From the NCBI GenBank assembly GCA_043228905.1, contig JBHGNT010000051.1, positions 1 to 64,000 on the forward strand: a stretch of 64,000 nt of DNA, written 5' to 3'. Shown here one piece after another: positions 46,337 to 64,000 of this stretch. The notes beneath the pieces were generated by a model. That model did no database searches, was not told the DNA's origin, and was given only the letters and a program-made list of their open reading frames with translations. Origin of the DNA: Azolla caroliniana. Taxonomy: Eukaryota; Plantae; Polypodiophyta. Made by a program: the position numbers and the translations under genes. Each line of letters starts with the position of its first letter. The first letter of the stretch is position 1.

Positions 46337-46468
46337 TATAATTCTATGACTCATACTAAATGCTAGACTACAAAGAGGTGACATAATGGTGACTCTTGAC
46401 CGTTGGAGTGTCTATTCACTCTCAAGGTGAGTTCACACACTAGACCAAGTTGAGCTTGATTCTCAACA

Positions 46469-49235
46469 ACATCTTTACATTTTCCTTCATGTCTCTTGGC
46501 TTGAATTTCAAAACTTAGAATTTATGAACTCATATCATAGCCTACATCAGTGGCTTTTATTTAATTATATGATCTCTAAATTCCGATATCATATGAGGAT
46601 GCCATGACCTTTTTTATTTATGTGGTGGCTCTTGTTTGCCCCTGCTTGACTTCTACTACAACTTTACATTTCCCTTCATGTCTCTGGGCGTGAATTTCAA
46701 AACTTAGATTTTATTACCTAATATCATACCCTACGCCGTTGGCTTCGATTCAACTATTGGAACTCTGATATCCGATATCAGATGAGGACGGCATGACATT
46801 TTTGATTCATGTGGTGGCTCTTGTTTGCCCCTACTTGAGTTTTACCAAAACTTTATATTTTCCTTCATGTCTATTGGCTTGAATTTCAAAACTCAGATTT
46901 TATTACCTCATATCATACCCTACGTTGTTGGATCCGAGTCAACTATGGAAACTCTAAAATCCGATATCATATGAGGAAGCCATGACCTTTTTGACTGATG
47001 TGCTGGCTCTTGTTTCCCCTCCTTAACTTCTATCACATCTTTACATTTTCCTTTATGTCTCTTTGCTTGAATTTCAAAACTTAGATTCTATTAGCTCATA
47101 TCATACCCTACGCCGTTGGCTTCCATTCAACTATTAGATCTCTGAAATCCGATATCATATGAGGATGTCATGACCTTTTTGATTGATGTGGTGGCTCTTG
47201 TTTGCCACTGTTTCACTTTTACCACAACTTTACATTTTCCTTCATGTCTCTTGGTTTGAATTTCAAAACTTAGATTTTATTACATCATATCATAGCCTAC
47301 TGCGTTGGCATCGATTTAACTATTTGAACTCTGAAATCGGATATCATATGAGGATGTTATCACCTTCTTGATTGATTTGGTGGCTCTTGTTTGCTACTGC
47401 TTGACTTCTACCACAACTTTAAATTTTCCTTCATGTCCCTTGGCTTGAATTTCCAAACATAGATTTTATTATATCATATGATAGTCTACGTCGTTCGCTT
47501 CGATTCAACTATTTGAACTATGAAAATCGATATCATATGAGGATGCCATCAATTTTTTGATTCATGTGGTGGCTCTTGCTTGTCTCTACCTGACTTCTAC
47601 CACATCATTACATTTTCCTTCATGTCTGTTGGAATGAAATTCAAAATTCAGAGTTTATTAGCACATATCATAGCCTACGTAGTTGGTTTTGATTCAACAA
47701 TTTGAAGTCTGAAATATAATATCATTTGAGGAAACCATGACCTCTTTGATTCATCTGCTGGCTCTTGTTTGCCCCTGCTTGACTTCTACCACAACATTAC
47801 ATTTTCCTTCATGTGTCTTGGCTTGAATTTCAAAACTTAGATTTTATTACGTCATATGATACCCTACGTTGTTGGCTTTGATTCAACTATTTGATCTCTG
47901 ACATCCGATATCATATGAGAATGCCATGACCTTTTTGATTGATGTGGTGGCTCTTGTTTGCCCCTCCTTGACTTCTACCACAACTTTAAATTTTCCTTCA
48001 TGTCTCTTGGCTTGAATTTGAAAACTTAGATTTTATTACCTCATATCATAAACTACATCGTTGGCTTCGATTCAACTATTTGAACTCGGAAATCCGATAT
48101 CATATGAGGACGCCATTACCTATTACATTCATATGGTGGCTCTTGTTTGTCTCTACATGACTTCTACCACAACTTTACATTTTCGTTCATGTCTCTTGGC
48201 GTGAAATTCAAAACTTAGATTTTATTACATCATATCATAGACTCCGTTGATGGCGTCGATTCAACTATTTGAACTCTGAAATCGTATATCATATGAGGAC
48301 GCCATGACCTTTATGATTGAGGTGGTGGCTCTTGTTTGCCCCTACTTGACTTCTACCACAACTTTACATTTTCCTTCATTTATCTTGGCTTGAGTTTCAA
48401 AACTTATATTTTATTACCTCATTTCATAGCCTGCTTTGTTGGCTTCGATTCAACTATTGGAACTCTGAAATCCGATATCATATGAGGATGCCATGACCTT
48501 TTTGATTGATGTGGTGGCTCTTTTTTGCCCTTGCTTGACTTCTACCAAAACTTTATATTTTCCTTCATGTCTCTTGGCTTGAATTTCAAAACTTAGATTT
48601 TATTGGCACATATCATAGCCTACGTCCTTGGCTTCGATTCAACTATTTGATCTCTGAAATCGGATATCATATGAGGATGCTACGACCTTTTTGATTCATG
48701 TGGTGGCTCTTGTTTGCCCCTACTTGACTTCTACCACAACTTTACATTTTCCTTCATGTCTCTTGGATTGAATTCAAAACTTATATTTAATTAGCTCATA
48801 TCATAGCCTACGTTGTTGGCTTCGATTCAACTCTTCGAACACGGTAATCGGATATCATATGAGGATGCCATGACCTTTTTTATTCATGTGGTGGCATTTG
48901 TTTGCCTCTACATGAGTTCTACCACAACTTCACATTTTCTTTCATGTCTCTTGGCTTGGATTTCAAAACTTATATTTTATTACCTCATATCATACCCTAC
49001 GTTGTTGGCTTCGATTCAACTATTTGAACTCTGAAATCTGATATCATATGAGGACGCCATGACCTTTTTGATTCATGTGGTGGCTCTTCTTTGCGCCTGC
49101 ATGACATCTACCACAACCTTACATTTTACTTCATGTCTCTTGTCTTGTATTTCAAAACTTTGATATTATTACCTCATATTATACCCTACGTCGTTGTCCT
49201 TGATTCAACTATTGGAACTTGGAAATCCGATATCA
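46469..49235 (+). repeat. ~189-bp satellite array (~14-15 monomers)
   Basis: The gtggtggctc motif recurs at 46622, 46811, 47000 and 47188, a period of 188-189. Confidence 0.96.
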
Positions 49236-50510
49236 TAAACCCTTAATCGCCTTTACATTGAACAAACTCTTTGTCTCTCCTAAAGGAGCTTGAGCGAGTT
49301 CGAATCCCTCCCGACACCATCCTCTTCACCTTCGACGTGGAGTCCCTCTACTCGAGCATCCCAACCAAGGAAGGTCTTCATGCCTTGAAGAGCATGATCA
49401 CCGATGCATTTGATGATCTATTGTTAAACCTTGGAATGACGTTATCTGACTTGGTTCTAGAATATCATTTTCTAGAATTCAATGGGACATACTGGCGTCA
49501 GCTCAAAGGTATAGCTATGGGGAGCAATTTTGCTATAGGATACGCTTGTGTCTTCCTATGTTTTTTGGAGAAATTACAGGAACAAACATGCAAACCCGAA
49601 GAACTAATCTTCTACAAAAGGTATATAGATGATGCGTTTGGCCTTTGGACAGGGACTTAGGATAGCCTATTACACTATCTTAAAGGCAGTGCATTTGGGC
49701 TACAACAACACATCAAGATAACTACATGCATTTCCACTACTGGCGTGGATTTCCTAGATATCCGCCTTTTCAAAGGAGAAGATTTTCTTCGCACGAACAA
49801 GCTTTCTAGCAGTTGTTATTAGAAGGAGCTCAACAGGTATCAATACCTTCCGCACTCCTCCTGGCATCCTCAACATCAAAAGAAAGCATTCATTATCGGG
49901 GAGCTGCGAAGATACATCCTACGGGAAAGTACCACAGAGGGCTATAAAAGAATAAGACGTCTATTATTCGAACGACTTCACGCCAGAGGCTACCCCGATA
50001 AGTTCCTTAGATTATGTTTCAATCAGGTCACATACTCGATGAGGACATCACTGCTTCATGCACCCTCCAAGAGAAGCGCAATGGATAAGGGTAATCCTTT
50101 AGTTTTAAAGCTGTATTTCTCTAAATATACGAAAGCCTTAAAACTTGGGAAAACCCTTATTCCTATTATTCACGAGCTAATCAAAGAGAATCCTAAGTTG
50201 TGCCATCTTCCGAAACCAATGATTTGCTAGAGTTTCCTCCAAGGGTTTAAAAATATTCCTTGGAGTTTCCATATTTTAGGATTGCTCTAAATTTTACCTT
50301 TCTTGTAAAGGACAGTTTAGAGGCATCACATATAAGACCCTCTAAAAGTATACCTAAAACAAGGTAAAATAATGCTTAGAAGCCTAAAAGTCACAGAAGT
50401 CCAAGGGTCATAGTCAATGGTCAAAATTACAGTTGCATTTTCTATTTCTCCCACATTTTTTATTTTCTCCCGCCTATTTTCGAGACTAGAATTTTCCCTC
50501 CACACGCTCT

Positions 50511-50517
50511 TATAAAA
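50511..50517 (+). promoter_or_regulatory. TATA box upstream of the PLE-1 hammerhead hairpin
   Basis: TATAAAA ~30 bp upstream of the CTTGTA…TACAAG hairpin. The same arrangement recurs at 51256. Confidence 0.55.
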
Positions 50518-50554
50518 AGGAGGGTGCGAGGGCTCATCTCTTGTATCCACAATC

Positions 50555-50612
50555 TAGTGTTCCACTGAAGAGCTCAGGATTAGCTGAGCGAAACATGTAT
50601 GGAGATACACTA
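50555..50612 (+). ncRNA. Type I minimal hammerhead ribozyme (intact core)
   Basis: Stem I is tcca/tgga, extended by tagtgt/acacta. CTGAAGA lies at 50565-50571. Stem II is gctcag/ctgagc, followed by GAAA at 50590-50593. Stem III is the palindrome ACATGT, and the cleavage triplet GTA ends at 50599. Confidence 0.9.
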
Positions 50613-50771
50613 ATCCTTTGGTAATACAAGTTTTTTTTTTAATTTTATGTTTCGTTTCTCCTTAATAGTGTAATTAAGTTTTCTGTAATCTTAATTAAGC
50701 CACACTATATCTCTCTCAATCCCTTTCTTCTCTACTCCCGCACGCCTAGTATAACCCCATAAAACCCTAAA

Positions 50772-52274
50772 AGCAACATAAGAAGGGCTTCATCACAGGA
50801 GAACTAAAAAGATATGCAATTCGAGAAAGCTCTGAAAACGGTTTCATGGAAATGCGGAAAAAATTCTATGACCGACTACGGGCTCAGGGCTACCCTTCGA
50901 AATTCCTACTCAAATGCTTCTCAACTGTCTCGTACTCCCTACGACCCCAACTCCTCCCCACCCAAACCAACAACAAAAAACCCCCTCCCATAGTGTTAAA
51001 ACTTCGCTACTCCCCGCACATAAAAAAAACTTCACATTGGTGCGCTAATGAGAAGCCGCCTACAAACCCTTCTACAACAACCACAGTATACATCTCTCTC
51101 ACCACCCCTTGTATGGTGGCTAAATGGCACAAAGTTAAGAAGTCATTTAGTCAAATCATCCTTTCCCCCTACCTAAAAGTTTTCTCCTTTTTTGTATCCC
51201 TTCTCTTGTACACCCCACACTTATCCCACATACATAGGAATCTTCCCCCACTCCCTATAAAATGAGCAACCTAGTAGGCTTAGTTTCATCACTTGTAACT
51301 CGGGCACTAAAGAGCCTCCTTCGAGGCAAAATGCATTTGCCGTTTTAATACAAGTAAAACTCTTCCTCTCTACGGTTGCTCATTGTCTTACGTTTTTTCA
51401 TATTTAGATTTTGTCTAATATTTTGTTTAGCTCATTTTGATTAATCAATCTCTTTTGTCTAATCTTTTGGTTAAGTTCTTTTTATTTTAGTTTTGTCTAA
51501 TATTTTGTTTAAACTCATATGATTAAGCAATCTTTTTTGTCTAATCTTTTGTTTAAAATTTTTTGATTAAGTATTTGTCCTTTAGTCTAAACCTTTGTTT
51601 AAGTACTTGTTTAACTAATCTCCATTTACTTAAACATTCACTTAAGTTTTTAATCCCTTTATGCTTTCATTTAAACAATCTTCTTAATGCTCTCCTAACA
51701 CCTTCTCCTTATGCACTTGTTTACGTGTTTACCTTAATCCCCTTTCCTCTCTTTGTTTAAATGTGTAAGTAATCTTCTTTTTAGTTCTAACTCTCTTTTG
51801 TCTTAGATCTAAATCTCGCTTGTGTCAAGTCCCCTCAAACTTTGTTTTCTAAATAATTTTTAGTTCTAACTCTCTTTTGTCTTAAGTCTAAATCTCTCTT
51901 GTCTCAAGTCCCCTCAAACTTTGTTTGCTAAATAATTTGTGGTTTATAAGTTCGATCTCTCTCACTCTTTGTTTTACTAATAATTTCTCATCTTGCTAAT
52001 ATCCTTCTTCTACTTGTACACCCCATCTCTCTCCCCCCTCCTTCCTCCTTTCTCCTTCACATACCCCTCCCCCCTTTCCCCCATCAACATCTCCCTCACA
52101 TACCCCTCCCCCCTTCCCCCATCAACATCATCTCTCCCTTACATAACCCCTTCCCCCATCACCATCCCCCACCTAAAACTTTAAGTTTAGATACGCAAAA
52201 TATCTAAACTTCAGCCAACCACAAACAAACCCGATGAAGTGCCGCACGCTTTAAGCCACTATAGAAACCCTAAA
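50772..52274 (+). mobile_element. Penelope-like element family 2: 3' fragment (RT thumb and 3' region); right boundary uncertain
   Basis: The frame KQHKKGFITGELKRYAIRES…RLRAQGYPSKFL starts right after AAACCCTAAA. It is followed by TATA at 51256-51262, a degenerate hammerhead and an AT-rich tail with 79-bp direct repeats (~51780-51938). The next telomeric seeds are at 52265 and 52739. Confidence 0.75.
51291..51355 (+). ncRNA. Degenerate hammerhead ribozyme in the PLE-2 3' hairpin
   Basis: ggca-CTAAAGA-gcctc(cttc)gaggc-AAAA-tgca-tt-tgcc, with outer stem acttgta/tacaagt. It differs from consensus (CTGAAGA…GAAAcgcgtT) only by G>A and C>T changes. Confidence 0.72.
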
Positions 52275-52738
52275 ACACCTTTGTTGTAGCGTCTTGCCAC
52301 TCATCACCCCTCACCCCTCATCCCCATTCACTCACTTGACTTTCCTACACTTAGCTTCTCCCAAACCTTGCTTATCAATAATTTTACTTTTGTCTCTAGA
52401 TCTTTGTCCATTACTAATTTTTTGCCTCTAAAAAGACTTTTTGGTTTACCAATTTTTTATTTTAAGTGGAACATACCCAAATCTCACCCCTAAATATCTC
52501 ACTCAAAGCTCCTTTAAAATTGTGCATATCAACAACTTTTGCTACTATCTTTTCATGTCTAAAACATTGTGTTAATAATTCTTGTCTCTAAATAATTTTT
52601 TAAATACCCTTGTTACTTTAGTTTGAGTACACCCCAATCTCATCCCTAACTTGCATCCCTCTCATTTCCCCTCACATACCCCCCCTCTAGCCATAGCACA
52701 TTACAAACCTTAAGCACCCTCCACCATAACCTTCTCTC

Positions 52739-54115
52739 AAACCCTAAACCCTAAAAACACACCCTCCCCTACACATACCCCCCTCTCTAACTATAATAAC
52801 CACACTCCTCATCTCTCGTCCACTACACACCCACTCACACCTTTCGTCTCTTGCTCTCCTCGAGCTTTTTTCAGCACAACATACCACTTAAATGGCAACG
52901 AAAGGTCCCAAGATAAAGACAACCCAATGTCGCACAACGACCACCCCACCGACTACCACCGCACCAAAACCCAACTTCGAAAGGCTCCTTGAACCCACGA
53001 AGACCACCACCAACATCAACGCACTCGCTTTCGACCCGCCAGCAACAACCACTACTACCGCACTCTCTACCCACCCGGAAACAAGCACCCTCGCCACTAG
53101 TGTGCGCGTTTTCGATCCGCCAACAACCTCAAACAGGGACGCCTTCTCTCAACCCTCTCTTACATGTCAAATAATTAATAATAAAGTTCCAATACATCTA
53201 TATGATCTATGTGTCGAAGATGAGGACTCCACACACACCACGACCCCCCTAAACCCTAAACCTAAAACCCCCACCATACCTACTAAAAACGCCTCCCATA
53301 ACGTAATACCACCCAACAACCCTAGTAATAGCAAACGTAATCGCGACCTCTCTACACTCCTAGCAAATCTAGAAGACTTAAGAATGGAAGGGTCCCTCGA
53401 ATTCACAACCACGCTCCCCCTCGCTGGCAAACTAGCTCTCTACCACAAACTATTTGAGGTCTTCGGTTCCCCCCCCCCTTAGAACTCAGACATAAAGACC
53501 CGGCTTCCATCCCCTTGACAAACAACCAAAGCCCTCTACTATCTAGTAGTCATCACGCCCACGCAAATATGTGCACACAAGACAAGGGCAAGGGTAAAGC
53601 AACAACACTAAACCCAAGCCCCGAACCACTAAACCCCTTAGAAAACCTACCCATTCCCACCCACATTGACACTATTTGTCAAGGAACCCTTCTAGAATAT
53701 AAGGAGTTACATCCAGGGTTTAGGGTTTAGGGTTTCAAACCTTCCCCTCATCTCGTATATTTCACTAGATACATCGATGACACTTTCGGTATCTGGACCG
53801 GATCCGAATCCCAACTAACCACCTATTTAAACTTCTATGGTATAACCACCAACAACTCTCTCAAGCTGACCACCCAAACTTCTTACACACAGCTACCCTT
53901 TTTAGATATCTGGGTAAATTTAGAAAAATTCCACTTTCTCTTTCAATTGCTTCCAAAAACTATTGAACACTTATCAATATATCCCTTTTTCTTCCACCCA
54001 CCCAACCCATGTCAAAAAAAGTTTCACCTCTAAGGAGCTTAAACGATATATGGTTCGGGAAAGTACAACTCTAGGATATCAATCTATACAACATAGTTTC
54101 TTTTCTAGACTTAGT
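52739..54115 (+). mobile_element. PLE family 3, copy a: ORF1 start fused to RT C-terminal half, 3'-truncated by satellite
   Basis: ORF 52892-53482/53676, then a cassette with (TTTAGGG)3 at 53677-53735, then RT LVYFTRYIDDTFGIWTG…LPFLDI…YIPFSSTHP. Confidence 0.8.
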
Positions 54116-54120
54116 TCCAT

Positions 54121-55105
54121 TTAAGGCAAGACAAATGAAGGAAAATGTAAAGATTTGGTAGAAGTCAAGCAGGGGCAAACAAGAGCCACCACATGAATAA
54201 AAAAAGTCATGGCGTCCTCATATGATATCGGATTTCAGAGTTCATATAGTTGAATCGAAGCCAACGACGTAGTCTATGATATGATCTAATAAAATCTAAC
54301 TTTTGAAAAGCCAAGAGACATGAAGGAAAATGTAAAGTTGTGGTAGAAGTCAAGCAAGAGCCAACAAGAGCCATCACATCAATCAAAAAGATCAGGGCGT
54401 CCTCATATGATATCGGACTTCGGAGTTCAAATAGTTGAATCGAAGGCAATGACGTAGGCTATAATATGTGCTAATAAAATATAACTTTTGAATTTGAAAA
54501 CGAAAGACATAAAGGAAAATGTAAAGTTGTTGTAGAAGTCATGTAGAGACAAACAAGAGCCACCACATGAATAAAAAAGGTCATGGCGTCCTCATATGAT
54601 ATCGTCTATCCAAGTTCCAATAGTTAAATCGAAGCCAACGACGTAGGGTATGATATGAGTATTAGAATCTAAGTTTTCAAAATCAAGCCAAGAGACATTA
54701 AGGAAAATGTAAAGTTGTGGTAGAAGTCAAGCAGGGGCAAACAGGAGCCTTCACATGAATAGAAAAGTTCATGACGTCCTCATATGATATCGGATTTCAC
54801 AGTTCAAATCGTTCAATGGAATCTAACGACCTAGGCTATGATATGTGCTAATAAAATCTAAGTTTTGAATTTAAAGAAGAGAGACCTAAAGGAAAATGTA
54901 AAGTTGTGTTAGAAGTTATGTAGAGACAAACAAGAGCCACCACATGAATCAAAAGGGTCATGGTGTTCTCATATGATATCAGATTTTGAAAGTTCAATTA
55001 GTTGAATCGAAGCCAACGACACAGGCTATGATATGTGCTAATAAAATCTATCTTTTGAATTTGAAGCCGAAAGACATGAAGGAAAATGTAAAGTTGCGGT
55101 AGACG
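54121..55105 (-). repeat. ~189-bp satellite, reverse orientation (~5 monomers)
   Basis: Reverse-complemented monomer motifs (gaaggaaaatgtaaagttgtggtagaagtc). Confidence 0.93.
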
Positions 55106-55294
55106 TCAATCTTTAGCTAGTTTCATCCATCTGACCAAAAGGTCCTTTCTTCGGTGAACCATTCGGTCTTCCCAGTCACGTCCTACAGATCCTCGCCTCG
55201 CCGATGCTTGCCACTCCGAATACGCACGATCTGTAACACTTCTCATATCTAAACTAGCTAACCTTTTTTTTAGCATCCCCCAGTAGCTACTACC

Positions 55295-57160
55295 CACTAC
55301 TACCGCACTCTCTGCCCACCCGGAAACAAGCACCCTCGCCACTGGTGCGCGCGTTTTCGATCCGCCAACAATCTCAAACAGGGACGCCTTCTCTCAACCC
55401 TCTCTTACATGTCAAATAATTAATAATAAAGTTCCAATACATCTATATAATCTATGTGTCAAAGATGAGGACTCCACACACACCACGGCCCCCCTAAACC
55501 CTAAACCTAAAACCCCCGCCATACCTACTAAAAACGCCTCCCATAACGTAATACCACCCAACAACCCTAGTAATAGCAAATGTAATCGCGACCTCTCTAC
55601 ACTCCTAGAAAATCTAGAAGACTTAAGAATGGAAGGGTCCCTCGAATTCACAGCCACGCTCCCCCTTGCTGGCAAACTAGCTCTCTACCACAAACTATTT
55701 GAGGTCTTTGGCTCCCCGCCCCTTAGAACTCAGATATAAAGACCCGGCTTCCATCCCTTTGACAACCAACCAAAGCCCTCCACTATCTAGTAGTCATCAC
55801 GCCCATGCAAATATGTGCACACAAGACAAGGGCAAGGGTAAAGCAACAACACTAAACCCAAGCCCCGAACCACTAAACCCCTTAGAAAACCTACCCATTC
55901 CCGCCCACTCTGACACTATTTGTCAAGGAACCCTTCTAGAATATAAGGAGTTACTTTCAGGGTTTAGGGTTTAGGGTTCCAAACCTTCCCCTCATCTCGT
56001 ATATTTCCCTAGATACATCGATGACGCTTTCGGTATCTGGACAAGATCCGAATCCCAACTAACCACCTATTTAACCCTCTATAGTATAACCACCAACAAC
56101 TCTCTCAAGCTGACCATCCAAACTTCTTACACACAACTACCCTTTTTAGATATCTGGGTAAATTTAGAAAATTCCACCTTCACTTTGAATTGCTTCCAAA
56201 AACTACTGAACACTTATCAATATATCCCTTTTTCTTCCACCCACCCAACCCATGTCAAAAAAAGCTTCATCTCGAATGAGCTTAAACGATATATGGTTCG
56301 GGAGAGTACAACTCTAGGATATCAATCTATGCAACATAATTTCTTTTCTAGACTTAGAGCCCAAGGATATCCCTCTAATTTTATATTGAAATTTTTTAAA
56401 CAAAACCCATATCACCTTCAGACCTCCCCTCCTCACACATACTACAACGAGGGAACACTCTACGCCCATTATCTTTTAACTCCAGTACACTCCCGACACC
56501 CCGGAACTGAAAATCAACGATATCCTTACTAAGCTTCATATAGATACACAATTAGATCAAGAACTCCAACATATCCCCAAACCAATTATTTGTTGGACGA
56601 AACCCAAAAAACTCCACTCACTCCTTGTGAAACCAAAAAATATTACCACTCTTTCCATCTCGGCATAAATACCCCTCACATATATTTTCTCCTTCCTTCT
56701 CTTCCATTTTCTCTCTCTCTCTCTCTGTCTCTCTCTCTATTACATATCGTTACTACCTAAAACACTATAGGCTACTATTCCACCTTTTCCTTTCTCTCTC
56801 CTTTCTCTCTCCTTTCTCTCTCCTCTCTCTAACTTTCCCTTCCTCCCTCTCCTCTCTCTATCTTTTTTCACCTATATCTATTTCTCACGTAACACAAAGC
56901 CATTCTTCCCTCCCTCCTCCCTCTCTCTACCCTCCCCTCTCTCTACCTCCTGTCACTCTCCTCTTCTCACTCTTCTCACTCCTCTCTCTCCTCTCTCCTC
57001 CCATTCCCCCCTGTAATTTCCTTTCCTCGTAACCCTTACCTAAAATCTCTTTATTTCACACACTTTATCTTTTATCACATACACTTTATTTTCCCACTTA
57101 TCACACACCTTTTATTTCTTCACTTATCACACTCAATCATACCTCCCTCCTTATCACACT
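55295..57160 (+). mobile_element. PLE family 3, copy c: duplicate of copy a with complete RT C-terminus and CT-rich 3' UTR
   Basis: 55295-56355 parallels 53050-54115. RT ends KPIICWTKPK… with TAA at ~56668. No endonuclease. Confidence 0.82.
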
Positions 57161-59150
57161 AAACAACACCCTAAACAAAACCTATACGCTAAATCTAACC
57201 CCAAACCCATACCCAATCCATACCCGGGTAGGTCCCACAAACACTTCTTTCACACGAACCATAATACTAATCAATATAAACAATGGTCGGACCGTCATAG
57301 TCATCATCACCATCATCAATTACAAGATCCACAATCAAATTACCATCAACAAAACCACACTCCTTATCATCATCATCTAAAATCACAAGCTCCACCATCA
57401 TACCACCACCACCAACAACACCACCACCAACAGCCACTGAAACATTTTCAACCGCCATACTGTCATCAAACACAAGTACATCAACAGCGACCGGACCAAC
57501 ACCATCTACATGTTCAACATCATCCGTAGCCACTAACCTTTCACCATTGCCAACCATCAAGCCTTCCTCAGCAACAGGCACCCATTCAACGCGCCTATTC
57601 CTATAACATAACAACCAATGAACCCATTCAACTTAACCCAATTAACAATAGACATAATATACATGAGCCTATTGTTAAACTCATCAATGTACCGATGCCT
57701 CCACCGCCTCCCCAGGAACCAATCTTTTCTGACCAATGTAAATCCCATGTAATACCCCCGCCGGAAATGAGGACCATGGACATACCATGGACCGCCACAC
57801 ATCCATTGTCGACGCCGCAGCCACCACAACACCGCACAGATGAGGTTCTCAGTGAAGGGTGCCATAATAGTCACCGACCCACTCAAATCTCTCAACTTTT
57901 TGAACAACCGCTGCTCGAGCCGCACTGGATACGAAGCCGCCGGTACCACTTCCTCCGTCGCACCAATCCCATACCCGTGTCGGAACTGCGTGGGGCAGTA
58001 ATCAAGGGTATGGACCGCCTTCAAATCCTTCCCCCAACCCTCCTATTACACCCACGTCGTCCCACCTCCGCCCCTTCCCTTCCCAAGGAGCAGAAGACAT
58101 ACCGCCTCAACCGCTTAATCCTCTCCAAGAAAGCACTATCCCCATGCTTAGAACCATCCCCATAGGAAGCTTCCTCCCCATACAAGAGCGTATTGAGATC
58201 CATGCACATCCCTACCCAAACCCACACAGTCACTCTCTGTTCCCTCACACACACAATCACTCTCTATTCCCTTACACATAGTTACCCCTCGCTCCCTTCC
58301 TACTCTCACCCAAACTCACACTCACACATAAACCCCTCTAATTCTAACTCACACACATACCCTTTTATTTATACACATACCCCTAATAATATCCTTCCCC
58401 CCACCAATTCCCACCTACATCCACACAACTACATGTCACACACTTAGTCCAAACCCCTTTTCTTCTTTTTTCTTCCCTCCCCCCCCACACTTCCCGTAAA
58501 TACTATAAACCCCCTCCTTTAAACCATAAGCCTTTCAATAATAAAACCCCTCACTATCCCTCAATTAAACCCCCTAAACCCACCCTTAAACCTAATCCTA
58601 CCTATCCCCCCTTCAATCCTACTAGAAACAACCCCTCTCCTTATAATCTCATTGACCCACACCCAAAAAACATGTAACGCGGCATGCGAATCATACGAAT
58701 AGACGATTCTGACACGCTGTGCACCCTACTAAATGTCTAGTTTATCTACTTAATAGACCCACACACGCCACCAATGCACGTGTATGGTTAGGAAAATCTC
58801 TCTTGTCGAATCCCTTTCCACCCCAAACCCAAACACGTACACAAAAAACGTCATAGATTTAAATTTTGGAAACCTCTTTCATCTATCCCTACTTCAAACC
58901 CCAACACCAAACCCATACTAGAAAGTAAAATCGACAAATTGTCCTCCTATACCCTTAGTAAGTTCGAAGTTAAACTTCTTAACTCAGGACTCAAGTACAT
59001 AACGCCGTGTGCACCCCAGTCCACCCAAGTCATCCTCCAAGAATATCAACACCTTAGTAGGTCTCTTAGACTCAAACATGTCTTTAAAAATAATGACTCA
59101 CCCATAGATAATCCCTTTAGATTTCCAAACCCAAGTTGGAACCCACCCAC
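57161..59150 (+). mobile_element. PLE family 3, copy d: middle of ORF1 to RT N-terminus
   Basis: Reverse-complement homolog of ~60990-62980. It ends in the PLE RT N-terminal motif LSSYTLSKFEVKLLNSGLKYI…SRSLRLKHVF. Confidence 0.8.
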
Positions 59151-59164
59151 GAAATACCCACCAC

Positions 59165-62100
59165 GAAGGAGAGTAGGAAAGGAGACATGGGTGGTTGGTT
59201 TCTAGAGTGACGTGTGGGTGCTAATTATGAGATAGGCGGTTGGTGATATGTGGTTTGGAATGGAATAAATGTTTGTGATAAGGGGACATGACTGAGTGTG
59301 ATAAGGAGGGAGGTATGATTGAGTGTGATATGTGAAGAAATAAAAGGTGTGTGATAAGTGGGGAAATAAAGTGTATGTGATAAAAGATAAAGTGTGTGAA
59401 ATAAAGAGATTTTAGGTGAGGGTACGAGGAAAGGAAATTATAGGGGGGAGTGGGCGGAGATAGGAGAGAGAGGAGTGAGAAGAGGAGAGTGATAGGATAT
59501 AAAATGGTAGAGAGAGGAGAGGGTAGAGAGAGGGAGGAGGGGGTAGAGAGAGAGGAGGGAGGGAAGAGTGTTCTTGTGTTACCTGAGAAATAGAAATTAT
59601 AGGGAGGGGGGAGATGAAAAAAGCTAGAGAGAGGAGAGGGAGGAAAGGAAAGTTAGAGAGAGGAGGGAGGGAAGAGTAGCCTTATGTTACGTGAGAAATA
59701 GAAATTGGAAGGCAGAGGAGGAAAAAGGTAGAGAGAGGAGAGGGAGAAAGGGAAAGTTAGAGAGAGGAGGAAGGGAGGGAGGGAAAGGTGGAAAGAGTAG
59801 CCTATGGTGTTTTAGGTAGTGAGGAAATGTAAGAGAGAGAGAGAGAGAGAGCTAGAAAATAGAAGAGAAGGAAGGAGAAAATATATGTGACGGGTATTTA
59901 CGACGAGATGGAAAGGGTGGTAATATTTTTCGGTTTCACAAGGAGTGAGTGGAGGTTTTTGGGTTTCGTCCAACAAATAATTGGTTTGGGGATATGTTGG
60001 AGTTCTTGATCTAATTGTGAATCTATGTGAAGCTTAGAAAGGATATCATTGATTTTCAATTTTGGGGTGTCGGGAGCGTACTTGAGTTTAAAGATAATGG
60101 GTGTAGAGTGTTCTCTCGTTGTAGTATGTGTGAGGAGGGAAGGTCTATGGTGATATGGGTTTTGTTTAAAAAATTTCAATATAAAATTAGAGGGATATCC
60201 TTGGGCTCTAAGTCTAGAAAAGAAACTATGTTGCATAGATTGATATCCTAGAGTTGTACTCTCCCGAACCATATATCGTTTAAGCTCATTAGAGATGAAG
60301 CTTTTTTTGACATGGGTTGGGTGGGTGGAAGAAAAAGGGATATATTGATAAGTGTTCAGTAGTTTTTGGAAGAAATTGAAAGAGAAGGTGGAATTTTCTA
60401 AATTTACCCAGATATCTAAAAAGGGTAGTTGTGTGTAAGAAGTTTGGGTGGTCAGCTTGAGAGGGTTGTTGGTGGTTATACTATAGAAGTTTAAATAGGT
60501 GGTTAGTTGGGATTCGGATCCTGTCCAGATATCGAAAGCGTCATCGATGTATCTAGTGAAATATACGAGATGAGGGGAAGGTTTGAAACCCTAAAAGTAA
60601 CTACTTATATTCGAGAAGGGATCCTTGACAAATAGGTCTGTAGCTAATTGGGTTTTTATGGACTTTAGGGAGGAAGTACATTTGGGGGACTAGGTATCCT
60701 TTTGGTGGTTGAAGTAAGATAAACTTGGCCTCTTGGGGTGATAGGATGTTGTGGTTTTTATTACCTAAGTGGCGTAGTCTATGGAGGAGTTCTTCCAAAG
60801 GAAAGGTATTTACTACCTTATACGTGGAAGGATTAGAAAGGTGTTCTTGGCCTTTTTCGAGGTAGTTTTTATGTCGAGGACACATACCCCGTTGTTTTTA
60901 TCGGTGGGTAGAATGGTTATTAGTTTATTTTTTAGGAGGCTTTTGAGTCCTATTTGTAAGTGCTTGGGGATTTTACATTTTGGTAGTGAGGTGGGTGGGT
61001 TCCAAGTTGGGTTTGGTAGTCTAAAGGGATTATTTAGGGGTGAGTCATTAGTTTTGAAGAAATGTTTGGGTCTAAGAGACCTACTAAGGTGTTGATATTC
61101 TAGGAGGATGACTTGGGCGGACTGGGGTGCACACGACGTTATGTATTTGAGTCCTGAGTTAAGAAGTTTAACTTCGGACTTACTAAGGGTATAGGAGGAC
61201 AAGTTGTGAATTTTACTTTCTAGTGTGGGGTTTGGGTTTGGGTTGGAAGTAGGGATACATGAAAGAGGTTTCCAAAATTTAAATCTATGACATTTTTTGT
61301 GTACGTGTTTGGGTTTGGGGTGGAAAGGGATTCGACAAGAGAGATTTCCTAACCATACACATGCATTGGTGGTATGTGTGGGTCTATTAAGTAGGTAAAC
61401 TAGAAGTTTAGTAGGGTACACGGTGTGTCGGAATCGTCTATTCGTACGATTCGCACGCCGCGTTGCACGTTTTTTGGGCGTGGATCAATGGGATAATAAG
61501 GAGAGGGGTTGTTTCTATTAGGATTGAAGGGGGGATTGGTAGGATTAGGTTTAAGGGTCAGTTTAGGGGGTTGGATTGAGGGATTGGGGGGGTTTTTATT
61601 ATTGGAAAGCTTATGGTTTATAGGAGGGGGTTTATAGTGTTTACGGGAACTGTGGGGGGGGGGAAGAAAAAAGAAGAAAAGGGGTTTGGACAAGTGTGTG
61701 ACATGTAGTTGTGTGGGTGTAGGTGGGAAGTGGTGGGGGGAAGGGTATTATTAGGGGTATGTGTATAAAAAAAAGGGTATGTGTGTGAGTAAGAATTAGA
61801 GGGGTTTATGTGTGAGTGTGAGTTTGGGTGAGAGTAGGAAGGGAGCGAGGGGTAACTATGTGTAAGGGAATAGAGAGTGATTGTGTGTGTGAGGGAACAG
61901 AGAGTGACTGTGTGGGTTTGGGTAGGGATGTGCATGGATCTCAATACGCTCATGTATGGGGAGGAAGCTTCCTATGGGCATGGTTCTAAGCATGGGGATA
62001 GTGCTTTCTTGGAGAGGATTAAGTGGTTGAGGCGGTATGTCTTCTGCTCCTTGGGAAGGGAAGGGGTGGAGGTGGGACAACGTGGGTGTAATAGGAGGGT

Positions 62101-63427
62101 TGGGGGAAGGATTTGAAGGTGGTCCATACCCGTGATTGCTGCCCCACACAATTTCGACACGGGTATGGGATTGGTGCAACGGAGGATGTGGTACCGGCAG
62201 CTTGGTATCCAGTACGGCTCGAGCAACAGCTGTTCAAAAAGTTGAGAGCTTCGAGTGGGCGGGTGACTATTATGGCACCCTTCACTGAGAACCTCATATG
62301 TGCGGTGTTGTGGTGACAGCGACGTCGACAACGGATGTGTGGCGGTCCATGGTATGTCCTTGGTCCTCATTTCCGGGGGGGGTATTACATGGGATTGACA
62401 TTGGTCAGAAAAGATTGGTTCCCGGGGAGGCGGTGGAGGCATCGGTATATTGATGAGTTTAACAATAGGCTCATGTATATTATGTCTGCTGTTAATTGGG
62501 TTAAGTCGATAAGAGAGTTCATGGGTTGCTATGTTATAGGAATAAGCGCGTTGAATGGGTGCCTGTTGCTGAGGAAGGCTTGATGGTTGGCGATGGTGAA
62601 AGGCCGGTGGCTGCGGATGATGTTGAACCTATGGATGGTATTGGTCCGGTCGCAATTGATGTACCTACGTTTGATGACAGTATGGTGGCTGAAAATGTTT
62701 CAGTGGCTATTGGTGGTGATGTTGGTGGTGGTGGTGGTATGATGGAGGAGCTTGTGATTTTAGATGATGATGATGAGGATTGTGGTTTTGTTTATGGTAA
62801 TTTAACTGTGAAGCTTGTAATTGATGATGGTGATGATGACTATGACGGTCCGACCATTGTTTATATTGATTACTATTATGGTTCGTGTGAAAGGAGTGTT
62901 TGTGGGAGCTACCCGGGTATGGATTGGGTATGGGTTTGGGGTTAGAGTTAGCGTATAGGTTTTGTTTAGGGTGTTGTTTAGGGTTAGTATTGCATTTATG
63001 GTTTGGGTTTGGTTTGTTGAGGCCATTGGTGTATGCTTTATGGTTTTTTGGGTTTTTTGGGGAAGGGGCATCTTTAAAGTTTAGGTTTTTTGAGGAGTTG
63101 AAATTTGGTGGGTTAACATAATCCGGTGGTGTCTTGGTACTGTTCGAGGGGGGTATGAAGGATGGGCTATCGTAGAAGACGTCTTCAGCATGTTCTCCCA
63201 TGTCGTCTTCTTCTTCTATTACTTCTATTCCAAAGTTATAGCCGATGGCATAGTTATTGCAAGTATTAAGTAGATCTTCAATGTATTGTTCTAAGTAGGC
63301 CGTGATTTCTTCTAAGAATTTTTCGGGAGTGACATAATTAGAGACGCCATTTAGGTTGTAAGGTTCTTGTAGGGTGTTGGTGAGTTGTAGTAGATCTTTC
63401 CTTTAGGGAAATCATCTAATAACTTGG
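59165..63427 (-). mobile_element. PLE family 3, copy e (inverted): long ORF1 region, RT and 3' UTR
   Basis: RT N-terminus NLSSYTLSKSEVKLLNSGLKYI, ILPTDKNNG and PQMYFLPKVHKNPISYRPI. Motifs A and B are replaced by a cassette at 60586-60630. YIDD and the thumb run to a stop at 59898. Upstream Pro/Thr/His-rich ORFs extend to ~63400. Confidence 0.85.
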
Positions 63428-64000
63428 TGTGAGAGTGTACGAGAAGATCTAAGTGTTTTACATAAGTGCAAGTAAGTTCTTTGTTATATTGAATGGTTAG
63501 ACATACATTTTGGCCTTACAAGGATTCGAGCCCAAAACGTCTTGGTCTATATGTTAGACCTTTAACCATTATACTAACATATATCATGTATAGTTATGAT
63601 AAATGTATTATTAGTTATTACAAGATATTTAGAGTATTCTAGAACATTGTAGGATATTCCATTATTATATTAAATATCATAAATATCTAAAATATTCTAG
63701 AACATTCTAGAATACTCCATAAGGACCTATAAATAGGTGTCTATTCATTTATCACAACTCATTCGGTTCAACACTAGTTTGTAGCCCCTTAGCCTACTCT
63801 TTGTAATCCTTGCTCTCTTATAATATAAACTCTCTTTCCATTTCTAGTGTTCTTTCTCTCCCTCCCGCCCTCCCTCCCTCCCACTCTCTCTCTCTCCCTC
63901 TACCTTCTATTGTCATCTTATTTTTCTCTCTCCTATTTCCAAGTCACGACAGTTTGAACCAAATCTAACTCTTTTTTCTTCTTCTCCAACTTCTTCTTCT
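63428..64000 (+). repeat. Probable LTR of another retrotransposon, running off the window
   Basis: An abrupt change at TGTGAGAGTG interrupts PLE ORF1. It is AT-rich with attctagaa repeats, TATAAATA at ~63728, tgtaatc and aatataaa motifs, and a pyrimidine tract. Confidence 0.5.
63511..63584 (-). other. tRNA-like Pol III A/B-box sequence in the terminal LTR-like segment
   Basis: On the minus strand, TAGTATAATGG (63576-63566) and GGCTCGAATCC (63532-63522) lie 44 nt apart. Confidence 0.45.

What the first reader, a model, noticed from the sequence alone, without database searches (positions are those of the whole stretch)
49236..63427. Chain of endonuclease-less Penelope-like retroelements punctuated by telomere seeds: a buried, retroelement-built chromosome end
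Seen: three clearly different PLE RT families, with thumb motifs HQKKAFIIGELRRY, QHKKGFITGELKRY and HVKKSFISNELKRY. None has a GIY-YIG endonuclease after RT. All copies except e have their 5' end toward the telomere. Junctions carry C-strand telomere seeds: TAAACCCT at 49236, AAACCCTAAA at 50762 and 52265, and (AAACCCT)2 at 52739. The 57161 junction falls at a native ccctaaac. Established: endonuclease-deficient PLEs (Athena and terminons of bdelloids, Coprina of fungi, relatives reported in Selaginella) attach to chromosome ends by priming on the G-overhang. They become 5'-truncated and telomere-capped, forming polarised chains. Inference: this is a multi-family terminal-transposition system in a land plant, now ~49 kb inside because satellite and LTR nests were added distally.
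Basis: partly seen in the sequence, partly recalled or inferred. Interest (0 to 1): 0.88.

Follow-up and report, generated by a model that had tools for sequence, protein, structure and literature searches.

The report
Relic chain of telomere-type plant retroelements
About 49-63 kb inside a plant chromosome end lies a decayed cluster of endonuclease-less Penelope-like retroelements of the telomere-attaching kind already known from the spike moss Selaginella; its outer half still looks like a head-to-tail chain built on a former chromosome end, and its inner half has been scrambled by later duplications and inversions.

Summary
The window starts with a true (CCCTAAA)n telomere (1-3444). At 49.2-63.5 kb there are six fragments of three reverse-transcriptase families, about 43-45% identical to each other.

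The elements belong to a well-supported land-plant clade that includes the telomeric Selaginella elements. I confirmed a telomere-capped chain of those at a Selaginella scaffold end.

Three corrections:
- The seeds are mostly built into the elements (ribozyme-like motif, about 150-200 nt, seed, then ORF1). They are not telomerase caps.
- The "PLE-3" copies c1 and c2 are chimeras: family-2-like ORF1, then (TTTAGGG)3, then the family-3 RT C-terminal half.
- Only a→b→c1 is a clean chain. c1/c2, d and e are rearranged.

Copies a and b are single-copy, decayed, and shared with a second organism, so this is an old relic.

Verdict: a new member of a known kind, of moderate interest. First-stage notes (unchecked) report similar arrays inside a 178-bp satellite on other pieces of this genome. 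If true, that weakens strict terminal restriction.

The parts
1..3444 (+). Terminal telomere array (CCCTAAA)n. The C-strand is on +, so the left end of the window is the chromosome end.
46454..49237 (+). 189-bp subtelomeric satellite, 14.7 copies, directly distal to copy a. The same satellite also lies at 3445-4106, 30719-32263 and, inverted, 54119-55109.
49236..49243 (+). TAAACCCT at the satellite|a junction. Only AACCCT lies outside the satellite monomer, so this is a weak seed.
   Evidence: The junction is bridged by contigs of three runs.
49244..50761 (+). Copy a (family 1). It is 5'-truncated at about RT aa 285-290. RT motifs A to thumb lie at 49262-50227 with two in-frame stops, followed by the ORF stop and a 3' UTR that is complete by comparison with L022.
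   Evidence: 43% to P0002, 45.5% to Selaginella P0013; nearest P0179/P0183; L022 2809-2932 matches 50507-50639.
50553..50620 (+). Hammerhead-like motif of copy a: CUGAAGA core, 6-bp helix II, GAAAC, palindromic CAUG. It is preceded by a TATA-like box.
   Evidence: The Rfam HH9 match is only 11.3 bits, E=7.
50762..50771 (+). AAACCCTAAA, the terminal seed of copy a, 197 nt after its ribozyme core. Copy b's truncated RT follows directly.
   Evidence: The homologous seed in L022 lies 190 nt after the ribozyme and 10 nt before the ORF1 ATG.
50772..52264 (+). Copy b (family 2). It is 5'-truncated within the RT thumb (aa ~486 onward, 50771-51050). It has a decayed hammerhead at about 51290-51335 and a 3' UTR with internal tandem repeats.
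   Evidence: It is 80% identical to P0182. L021 4287-5185 matches 50776-51623.
52265..52755 (+). Family-2 inter-unit leader 'x', bounded by the seeds AAACCCTAAA (52265-52274) and (AAACCCT)2AAA (52739-52755). It is collinear with the tandem unit junction of L021.
52756..54114 (+). Copy c1, a chimera. Leader plus family-2-like ORF1 (ATG 52892; homologous to L021 ORF1 aa 68-280), then (TTTAGGG)3 at 53715-53735, then the family-3 RT from motif C, cut off in the thumb at 54114.
54119..55109 (-). The 189-bp satellite in inverted orientation, separating c1 from c2. An unassigned 184 bp follows (55110-55293).
55294..57160 (+). Copy c2, 95.5% identical to c1 over 1066 bp. It is 5'-truncated in the family-2-like ORF1 and carries the same (TTTAGGG)3 scar (55959-55978). 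The family-3 RT C-half and 3' UTR end at the equivalent of L002 position ~3985, before the ribozyme/seed module.
57156..59162 (+). Copy d (family-3 5' part: ORF1 tail to RT aa ~126). Its 5' end falls inside a native AACCCTAAAC of the element, with 2-nt microhomology to the 3' UTR of c2. It is 3'-truncated.
59167..63500 (-). Copy e, the most complete family-3 copy, inverted. It runs from ORF1 (about aa 158 on) through the RT N-terminus with the DKN motif and motifs 1-2. Motifs A-B (about 400 bp in L002) are replaced by a 43-bp family-2-like ORF1 piece plus a telomere run (60586-60595). The RT C-half and the 3' UTR follow, ending at L002 position ~4117. Its 5' end abuts non-PLE DNA without a seed.

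Best explanation
This is an old, dead relic of terminal retrotransposition by endonuclease-less Penelope-like elements (EN- PLEs) of the plant 'Coprina/Selaginella-type' lineage.

Proposed mechanism. The elements encode ORF1 and an RT without an endonuclease. Their RNA carries a hammerhead-type motif and, about 150-200 nt downstream, short C-strand telomeric seeds. The inferred attachment step, taken from the published model for Athena and Coprina, is this: a seed at the RNA 3' end pairs with the G-rich 3' end of an unprotected chromosome terminus, and the element's RT extends that end. Each new copy therefore lies distal to the previous one, sense strand on the C-strand, with its 5' end towards the telomere.

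Proposed history here. A family-2-type unit (now b plus its leader plus the 5' part of c1) sat at an end. It was eroded into the RT thumb of b. Copy a (family 1) was then attached through its terminal seed and was itself eroded to RT aa ~290. Later the 189-bp satellite came to lie distal to a. LTR retrotransposons nested in that satellite pushed the chain from a few kb to 49 kb from the telomere. The proximal part (c1/c2, d, e) was reshaped by DNA-level events: a chimera-forming break healed with (TTTAGGG)3, a segmental duplication with inverted satellite, and an inverted duplication.

Shown: element class, polarity, truncation pattern, complete 3' end of a at the junction, intrinsic seeds, terminal chains in relatives.
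Inferred: that this locus was once the physical chromosome end, and the priming step.
For: Class:
- In the representative search, most full-length hits among the best 150 of 4917 are ~550-650-aa proteins that end where the query ends.
- No GIY-YIG was found in the 17 hits scanned with Pfam, which include the few with long C-terminal extensions, nor a GIY-YIG-like sequence pattern in any of the 402 fetched proteins.
- DKN, RT1-7 and thumb columns are invariant in alignment A4.
- A profile of A4 hits TERT, group II intron, retron and defence-associated RTs in the PDB list of 20, which names no retroviral or LINE RT.
- The tree places all three window families in a 26-row clade (SH-aLRT 99) with Selaginella, Ginkgo and Cryptomeria, sister to a small group that holds Closterium.

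Mechanism in kin:
- The end of Selaginella scaffold GL377664 (L015) has a telomere at 1-363 directly capping RT aa 539-576. A copy truncated at aa 346 and a full-length copy follow, all on +. Each has a hammerhead (Rfam HH9, E 1e-7 to 1e-9) followed about 200 nt later by (CCCTAAA)n.
- Four Mb-scale contigs of another eukaryote all begin with head-to-tail chains of P0273.
- L020 has the last ~115 nt of a family-1-like 3' tail, then a 124-bp telomere array with variant repeats, then a full-length element.

This locus:
- The 3' UTR of a is complete up to the seed (compare L022), and b starts inside the RT immediately after it.
- Five of six pieces are on the C-strand.
- The cluster is not a simple insertion into the satellite. 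The only satellite on the other side is inverted, and there is none beyond e.
- LTR nests (copia/gypsy domains, LTR pairs 96-99.7% identical) fill 4.1-30.7 and 32.3-46.4 kb between satellite blocks of matching orientation.
- Published model and features: PMC8557442, PMC12477314, PMC13159263, PMC4209133.
Against: - No long telomere tract survives at any junction here. The seeds (10-17 nt) are no longer than the elements' own seeds, so capping by telomerase is not shown.
- The 49236 seed is only 6-8 nt.
- c1, c2, d and e do not fit terminal addition. c1 and d are 3'-truncated. c2 and e lack the ribozyme/seed module. e is inverted.
- The c2|d junction has only 2-nt microhomology, so it could equally be a deletion inside a tandem pair.
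- b plus c1 could be the ordinary partial-tandem (pLTR) form that PLEs take on insertion.
- Unchecked first-stage notes report similar arrays inside a 178-bp satellite on other pieces of this genome. If those sites are internal, these elements can also settle away from ends.
- No fungal, rotifer, EN+ or TERT reference sequences were available, so the deep placement (Coprina against Athena) rests on the link to Selaginella.
Confidence: 0.6

Rival explanations
1. Endonuclease-independent insertion at internal breaks. The same EN- PLEs primed on free 3' ends at double-strand breaks or stalled forks inside the fragile subtelomeric satellite, so this place was never the physical chromosome end. The seeds are simply part of the elements.
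For: The seeds are intrinsic. Satellite lies on both sides of a-b-c1. c1 and c2 have 3' truncations with little or no microhomology, as expected for internal priming. Unchecked notes report PLE arrays inside a 178-bp satellite elsewhere in the genome.
Against: The satellite on the proximal side is inverted and only 1 kb long, so the flanks are not one interrupted array. The strict C-strand polarity of a, b and c1 matches the nearby telomere. Kin examined at scaffold and contig ends are terminal.
Confidence: 0.2
2. The chain was built at another chromosome end, or further out on this one. It was brought here by subtelomeric recombination, break-induced replication or segmental duplication together with satellite. 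It is a relic of terminal addition, but not at this position.
For: Subtelomeres here are clearly recombinogenic. The satellite changes orientation at about 31.15 kb and again at 54.1 kb. c1/c2 is a segmental duplication and d/e an inverted duplication.
Against: a and b are at single-copy depth, so no second copy of the block exists at 95% identity or more. Organism B shares the sat|a junction (contig 49059-49479, one difference) and holds stretches of a and b, though its b|x bridging is marginal, so any move must be old.
Confidence: 0.15
3. Ordinary dispersed EN+ Penelope elements whose endonuclease has decayed, or a non-PLE reverse transcriptase. The telomere-like words would be chance low-complexity matches.
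For: The copies are decayed, and the local Pfam scan gives only a weak RVT_1 hit.
Against: Intact relatives end at the same residue with a stop and no endonuclease. Nothing downstream matches any Pfam family. Relatives show 36 C-strand against 0 G-strand runs, with 1.1 expected per strand. Hammerhead motifs are present.
Confidence: 0.03

Closest known systems
Telomere-associated EN- PLEs of Selaginella moellendorffii (RepBase Coprina Sm1/Sm2; Gladyshev & Arkhipova 2007, as cited in PMC12477314, PMC13159263 and PMC4209133)
   Same: The RT has no endonuclease. Copy a is 45.5% identical over 312 aa to Selaginella protein P0013 and falls in the same SH-aLRT-99 clade. Both share an upstream ORF, a type-I hammerhead with a palindromic helix III, C-strand telomeric repeats about 200 nt downstream, sense strand on the C-strand, 5' truncations and head-to-tail order.
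   Different: Here the seeds are 10-17 nt, against 24-80 nt in Selaginella. The chain is 49-63 kb from the telomere, whereas the Selaginella copy in L015 is directly capped. The copies are dead, three deep families are mixed, and chimeric copies occur. The host is a different plant, which was not identified.
Athena elements and terminons of bdelloid rotifers (Arkhipova et al. 2017, as described in PMC8557442 and PMC12477314)
   Same: They are EN- PLEs that attach to G-overhangs with the help of reverse-complement telomeric repeats next to a hammerhead. They form long polarised chains, have more than one ORF, and can bury host DNA between units.
   Different: The hosts are rotifers, with a different telomere repeat, giant composite units (>40 kb) and a separate clade by published trees. 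In the terminon description the C-rich repeats are immediately adjacent to the ribozyme. Here they lie about 150-200 nt downstream.
Coprina-1_Alen of the fungus Ascochyta lentis (PMC13159263)
   Same: It has two ORFs (coiled-coil ORF1, then RT with DKN, RT1-7 and thumb), no endonuclease, ORFs pointing to the centromere, and telomeric repeats on both sides of copies.
   Different: The fungal copies are young, nearly identical, transcribed and at the very ends of 13 chromosomes. The copies here are old, truncated and buried.
HeT-A/TART/TAHRE of Drosophila (own knowledge)
   Same: Head-to-tail, 5'-truncated arrays are built by repeated attachment of retroelement 3' ends to chromosome termini.
   Different: Those are non-LTR (LINE) elements that use poly(A) and replace telomerase. 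Here telomerase repeats are present and the RT is of the PLE type.

Membership tests
Penelope-like elements (PLE) | RT with the PLE-specific N-terminal DKG/DKN motif, RT motifs 1-7 and the conserved thumb | tested here: met
   Copy e has ILPTDKNNGVCVLD and PKVHKNPISYRP. Copy a has FDVESLY, MGSNFA, YIDD and FLD. All copies have the thumb H.KK.FI..EL.RY. The same columns are invariant or nearly invariant in 92 relatives.
Penelope-like elements (PLE) | RT groups with PLEs (sister to TERT) in a rooted phylogeny with reference clades | tested here: inconclusive
   The window families group with the published Selaginella PLE proteins (SH-aLRT 99). A profile hits TERT and group II intron RTs in the PDB. 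Atlas neighbours are rotifer and chordate DUF8422/HTH_animal/RVT_1 clusters. No named Athena, fungal Coprina, EN+ or TERT sequences could be put in the tree.
Penelope-like elements (PLE) | Hammerhead ribozyme motif in the flanking (pLTR) region | tested here: inconclusive
   Copy a has an intact CUGANGA...GAAA core with a 6-bp helix II, but Rfam HH9 gives only 11.3 bits. The motif in b is decayed. Kin L002, L003, L010, L020, L021 and L022 carry canonical cores. Selaginella reaches 41-46 bits against a gathering score of 52. Cleavage was not tested.
EN- telomere-associated PLEs (Athena/Coprina type) | No GIY-YIG endonuclease, N- or C-terminal | tested here: met
   The ORFs stop after the C-terminal extension. 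Nothing downstream matches any Pfam family. No GIY-YIG was found in the relatives scanned with Pfam, nor a GIY-YIG-like pattern in any of the 402 fetched proteins.
EN- telomere-associated PLEs (Athena/Coprina type) | Reverse-complement (C-strand) telomeric repeats on the sense strand near the hammerhead and 3' end | tested here: met
   In a, the ribozyme core at 50565 is followed by the seed at 50762. L022: 2860 then 3050. L002: 4273 then 4428. L015: 8422 then 8642 and 12576 then 12788. Relatives carry 36 C-strand against 0 G-strand runs. The seeds here are short (10-17 nt).
EN- telomere-associated PLEs (Athena/Coprina type) | Located at chromosome termini with ORFs pointing to the centromere | tested here: inconclusive
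   The orientation criterion is met for 5 of 6 pieces. The cluster is subtelomeric (49-63 kb from the end) and not terminal. The genome-wide distribution could not be tested. Unchecked notes suggest copies in a 178-bp satellite elsewhere.
EN- telomere-associated PLEs (Athena/Coprina type) | 5'-truncated copies capped by telomerase-added repeats, with the next copy's 3' end attached to them | tested here: inconclusive
   The a|b junction has the right form: complete 3' end, 10-nt seed, RT-internal truncation. The seed is no longer than the intrinsic one, so capping is not shown. Clear examples exist only in kin: L015 (telomere directly on RT aa 539) and L020 (124-bp array).

The most novel reading that the evidence does not exclude
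EN- PLEs of this lineage form a vertically inherited clade that attaches to chromosome ends and spans streptophytes from Zygnematophyceae (Closterium) through lycophytes to gymnosperms. The clade is still active in close relatives of this plant: intact, identical ORFs occur in many samples, and tandem units assemble as circles. These elements would repeatedly patch eroded or broken plant chromosome ends alongside telomerase. Their many sense-strand telomeric seeds include ones that double as coding sequence in ORF1 (NPKP). These seeds would act as multiple annealing sites and as telomerase re-start sites, which would explain truncations exactly at native seeds such as the 5' end of d.
Probability: 0.3. 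Interest if true: 0.65.

Novelty: new member of a known kind. Interest (0 to 1): 0.45.

Why it matters
A recent plant review (PMC12477314) calls telomere-associated transposable elements rare in plants. For PLEs it cites only Selaginella.

This locus and the relatives fetched here show three things:
- The same kind of endonuclease-less, ribozyme- and seed-bearing PLE exists as several deep families in another plant lineage.
- Close kin occur in gymnosperm and Closterium (a streptophyte alga) gene sets, where they are annotated only as uncharacterised proteins.
- A telomere-to-telomere assembly can preserve a readable fossil of end-building by retroelements.

That gives plant telomere biology a concrete system for asking whether retroelement attachment backs up telomerase at damaged ends. 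It does not reveal a new mechanism.

Tried and rejected
- Rfam over 44-64 kb at E<=1 found nothing. A narrow scan gave only a weak HH9 hit for copy a. I therefore do not claim an active ribozyme.
- Local Pfam gave only weak RVT_1 hits. It did not reproduce the precomputed DUF8422/HTH_animal hits.
- phmmer of P0002 against the PDB found nothing. Only the profile search reached TERT and group II intron RTs.
- The two key papers (PMC1890498, PMC5850863) are not held. Their content is cited second-hand from PMC8557442, PMC12477314, PMC13159263 and PMC4209133.
- The search of earlier findings by sequence returned nothing.
- ARAGORN found no tRNA in the window, although 63520-63600(-) looks tRNA-like by eye.
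- Identifying the organism failed. Run names are coded. The copia polyprotein's best named hits are angiosperms at only ~44% identity, and the best unnamed hits reach ~50-53%. So the host is a plant, probably not an annotated angiosperm.
- I first read 'ICQGTLLEYK' before the G-run as a remnant of RT motif 2. I rejected this when it aligned to ORF1 aa 261-279 of the family-2 relative L021.
- I considered a|b as a nested insertion and rejected it. The 5' part of b is not upstream of a.
- Two literature searches for PLEs in bryophytes and ferns gave nothing relevant.
- In the tree script only, copy a was read through its two stops with X at each break.

Full report
**Setting**

The window is a chromosome end. 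A search for two CCCTAAA units with at most one mismatch gives 457 hits against 0.04 expected. A phase-perfect array runs from 1 to 3444 with the C-strand on +. A 189-bp satellite follows the telomere directly (3445-4106). It recurs at 30719-32263, changing orientation near 31.15 kb, at 46454-49237 (14.7 copies, +) and at 54119-55109 (inverted).

The stretches between the satellite blocks (4.1-30.7 and 32.3-46.4 kb) are nests of LTR retrotransposons. They carry copia gag/integrase/RVT_2 domains, a gypsy-type RVT_1 and LTR pairs 96-99.7% identical. No PLE RT is found outside 49.2-61.4 kb.

**The observation**

All three quoted thumb motifs are present. tblastn with an intact 620-aa relative (P0002) maps the pieces as follows:
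- a = aa 290-597 (49265-50227)
- b = aa 486-563 (50780-51013)
- c1 = aa 396-518
- c2 = aa 392-618
- d = aa 10-126
- e, on the minus strand = aa 1-279 and 396-618

The families are about 43-45% identical to one another and fall in separate subclades. Every ORF stops after the C-terminal extension (…KPKNLHSLLVKPKN… in e). No Pfam family, GIY-YIG included, matches any stop-free segment downstream at E<=1.

The telomere seeds are at the stated coordinates. Runs of 9 nt or more number 12 in the 14.3-kb region and 3 in the other 45.7 kb.

Contigs from independent public runs bridge the junctions. 49208-49784 is present without or with one difference in X1 and X2 (organism A, two studies). 49059-49479 is present in X3 (organism B). 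50684-51272 and 51279-52709 are present in X1, and 52114-52709 in X2. Copies a and b lie at single-copy depth (about 33-41 in X1, against 2000-5500 for the satellite). The structure is therefore real, old, and not an active multi-copy family at 95% identity or more.

**What the elements are**

An exhaustive HMMER search with the 230-aa C-terminal half of e found 4917 proteins. Most full-length hits among the best 150 are ~550-650 aa long and end where the query ends. The few hits with long C-terminal extensions have no GIY-YIG by Pfam, and no GIY-YIG-like sequence pattern occurs in any of the 402 fetched proteins.

All named relatives are streptophytes: Selaginella moellendorffii, Cryptomeria japonica, Ginkgo biloba and Closterium. 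An alignment of 92 relatives has the DKN motif, RT motifs and thumb invariant or nearly so. Its profile reaches TERT and group II intron, retron and defence-associated RTs in the PDB list of 20 hits, which names no retroviral or LINE RT. Atlas neighbours are DUF8422/HTH_animal/RVT_1 clusters, commonest in Rotifera and Chordata.

The tree is a quick IQ-TREE run (LG+G4, midpoint root, no outgroup). It puts the three window families in a 26-row clade (SH-aLRT 99) with Selaginella and the gymnosperms, sister to a small group that holds Closterium. Family 1 is nearest P0179/P0183, family 2 nearest P0182 (80% identity) and family 3 nearest P0001 (85%). The literature files the Selaginella elements under Coprina (Sm1, Sm2) and describes them as telomere-associated, with canonical hammerheads in their flanking repeats (PMC13159263, PMC12477314, PMC4209133).

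**How relatives are built and where they sit**

*Selaginella scaffold GL377664 (L015).* The scaffold ends in a telomere (locus 1-363) that directly caps a copy truncated at RT aa 539. A copy truncated at aa 346 and a full-length copy follow, all on the C-strand. Each hammerhead (Rfam HH9, 41-46 bits, E 1e-7 to 1e-9) is followed about 200 nt later by (CCCTAAA)4-12.

*Contigs carrying P0273.* Four contigs of 0.67-3.8 Mb from another eukaryote all start with one or two head-to-tail copies of P0273 on +.

*Close kin of the window families, from metagenome assemblies.* These contigs carry ORF1, then the RT, then a hammerhead, then seeds, then the next ORF1.
- L005, L012 and L022 have identical ends, which marks tandem units of about 3.7-6.1 kb.
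- In L022 (family 1) the seed lies 190 nt after the ribozyme and 10 nt before the ORF1 ATG.
- In L002 (family 3) seeds lie 155-350 nt after the ribozyme, the last one 10 nt before the ATG.
- In L021 (family 2) a 16-nt seed lies 115 nt before the ATG.
- In another family (L004) the leader has no seed. There the seeds lie inside ORF1, where AACCCTAAACC codes for NPKP.
- Over 42 kb of non-redundant contigs there are 36 C-strand runs of 9 nt or more and no G-strand run, with 1.1 expected per strand.
- L020 shows a buried cap: the last ~115 nt of a family-1-like 3' tail, then 124 bp of CCCTAAA/CCCTGAA repeats, then a full-length element.

**Re-reading the locus: the clean part**

The 3' UTR of a matches that of L022 through the ribozyme region (L022 2809-2932 matches 50507-50639) and the shared GGTAATACAAGTTTT block. 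It ends in AAACCCTAAA 197 nt after the ribozyme core. Copy b begins directly after that, inside its RT thumb. This is a complete 3' end joined to an internally truncated older copy. The 5' part of b is not upstream of a, so this is not a nested insertion.

The 3' UTR of b (L021 4287-5185 matches 50776-51623; L021 434-512 matches 52181-52256), the 464-bp 'x', the 17-nt seed and the ORF starting at 52892 are collinear with the tandem-unit junction of L021. The seeds at 52265 and 52739 therefore belong to one family-2-type leader. They are not two separate junctions.

**Re-reading the locus: the rearranged part**

- The ORF in c1 and c2 is homologous to L021 ORF1 aa 68-280, up to …DTICQG.LLEYKEL. 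Then comes (TTTAGGG)3 in sense orientation, and then the family-3 RT from motif C. The c copies are therefore chimeras.
- Copy e carries the same 43 bp plus telomere run in place of about 400 bp (RT motifs A-B) that are intact in L002. Its 3' half therefore shares ancestry with the chimera.
- c1 and c2 are 95.5% identical over 1066 bp. They are separated by inverted satellite plus 184 unassigned bases. c1 is cut off in the thumb.
- c2 ends at the equivalent of L002 ~3985 and e at ~4117, both before the ribozyme at L002 4273.
- The 5' end of d lies inside a native AACCCTAAAC of the element, with only a 2-nt overlap with the 3' UTR of c2. The metagenome contig L002 breaks 6 bp away.
- d is cut at RT aa ~126 and meets the 3' UTR of e head-on within about 4 bp.
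- The 5' end of e (ORF1 aa ~158) abuts non-PLE DNA with no seed.

**Interpretation**

The class, the polarity, the a|b junction and the behaviour of relatives support a fossil of terminal attachment by EN- PLEs (confidence 0.6).

Burial is largely accounted for. Without the LTR nests the chain would lie behind about 5 kb of satellite. How satellite came to lie distal to a is not shown.

Telomerase capping at this locus is not demonstrated, because the seeds are intrinsic and short.

The main rival explanations are endonuclease-independent insertion at internal breaks in the satellite (0.2) and relocation of a chain by subtelomeric recombination (0.15). First-stage notes on other pieces of this genome describe similar arrays inside a 178-bp satellite. 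They are unchecked, and they bear directly on the first rival.

**Novelty**

The kind is known: Selaginella since 2007, Athena/terminons, and fungal Coprina. What is added is a multi-family relic chain in another plant, chimeric copies, and a view of a streptophyte-wide clade. I rate this a new member of a known kind, with interest 0.45.

Noticed in passing
window 35224-35260 (between ORFs 33479-35221 and 35482-36792, minus strand): A Ty1/copia element has gag and protease upstream and SH3-like plus RVT_2 domains downstream. The integrase-core region between them is missing, and a 37-nt telomere run sits at the gap (G-strand in the element's sense orientation). This is the same kind of scar as the (TTTAGGG)3 that replaces part of the PLE RT at 53715, 55959 and 60586. 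It could reflect breaks healed briefly by telomerase and then rejoined, or template switching onto telomeric RNA.
   Followed up: partly
window 53715-53735, 55959-55978, 60586-60595: The '40-bp cassette' before the G-strand run in the family-3 copies is not RT sequence. It aligns to ORF1 aa 261-279 of the family-2 relative L021. c1 and c2 are therefore ORF1(family 2)-telomere-RT(family 3) chimeras, and e has acquired its 3' half from such a chimera.
   Followed up: partly
window 3445-4106 and 30719-32263: The telomere array is joined directly to a 189-bp satellite monomer at 3445. The satellite flips orientation at about 3624 and again at about 31150, giving palindrome-like junctions. This suggests fold-back or inversion events in the subtelomere.
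   Followed up: no
window 28658-28673 and 28877-28885: A 16-nt G-strand and a 9-nt C-strand telomere run lie 200 bp apart inside the LTR nest. They are unexplained.
   Followed up: no
L020 4800-5046: A metagenome contig from a related plant shows a textbook buried cap: about 115 nt of a family-1-like 3' tail, then 124 bp of alternating CCCTAAA/CCCTGAA repeats, then a full-length EN- PLE with a TATA box and hammerhead.
   Followed up: partly
L016-L019 (ERZ26858887, contigs of 0.67-3.8 Mb): In an unidentified eukaryote from a long-read metagenome, four large contigs all begin with head-to-tail chains of the same EN- PLE (P0273), with ORFs pointing inward. Three of the contigs start with the identical sequence. 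Short (AAACCCT)3 tracts lie nearby.
   Followed up: partly
L005, L012, L022: Contigs of intact relatives have identical 115-119-bp ends (assembler k-mer overlap). The units therefore occur as perfect tandem arrays or as circles in the source organisms. Identical RT proteins recur in up to 7 samples from two sets of ENA assemblies.
   Followed up: partly
window 63520-63600 (minus strand): The sequence just beyond the truncated 5' end of e looks tRNA-like or SINE-like by eye (…GGGCTCGAATCC…). ARAGORN calls no tRNA anywhere in the window.
   Followed up: partly
ORF1 of family-3 and P0175-type elements (e.g. window 57044-57526, 62710-63402; L006 1083-1518): Telomere-like words lie inside ORF1 coding sequence, where AACCCTAAACC encodes N-P-K-P in a low-complexity Asn/Pro/Lys tract. 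They are always in C-strand orientation on the sense strand.
   Followed up: partly
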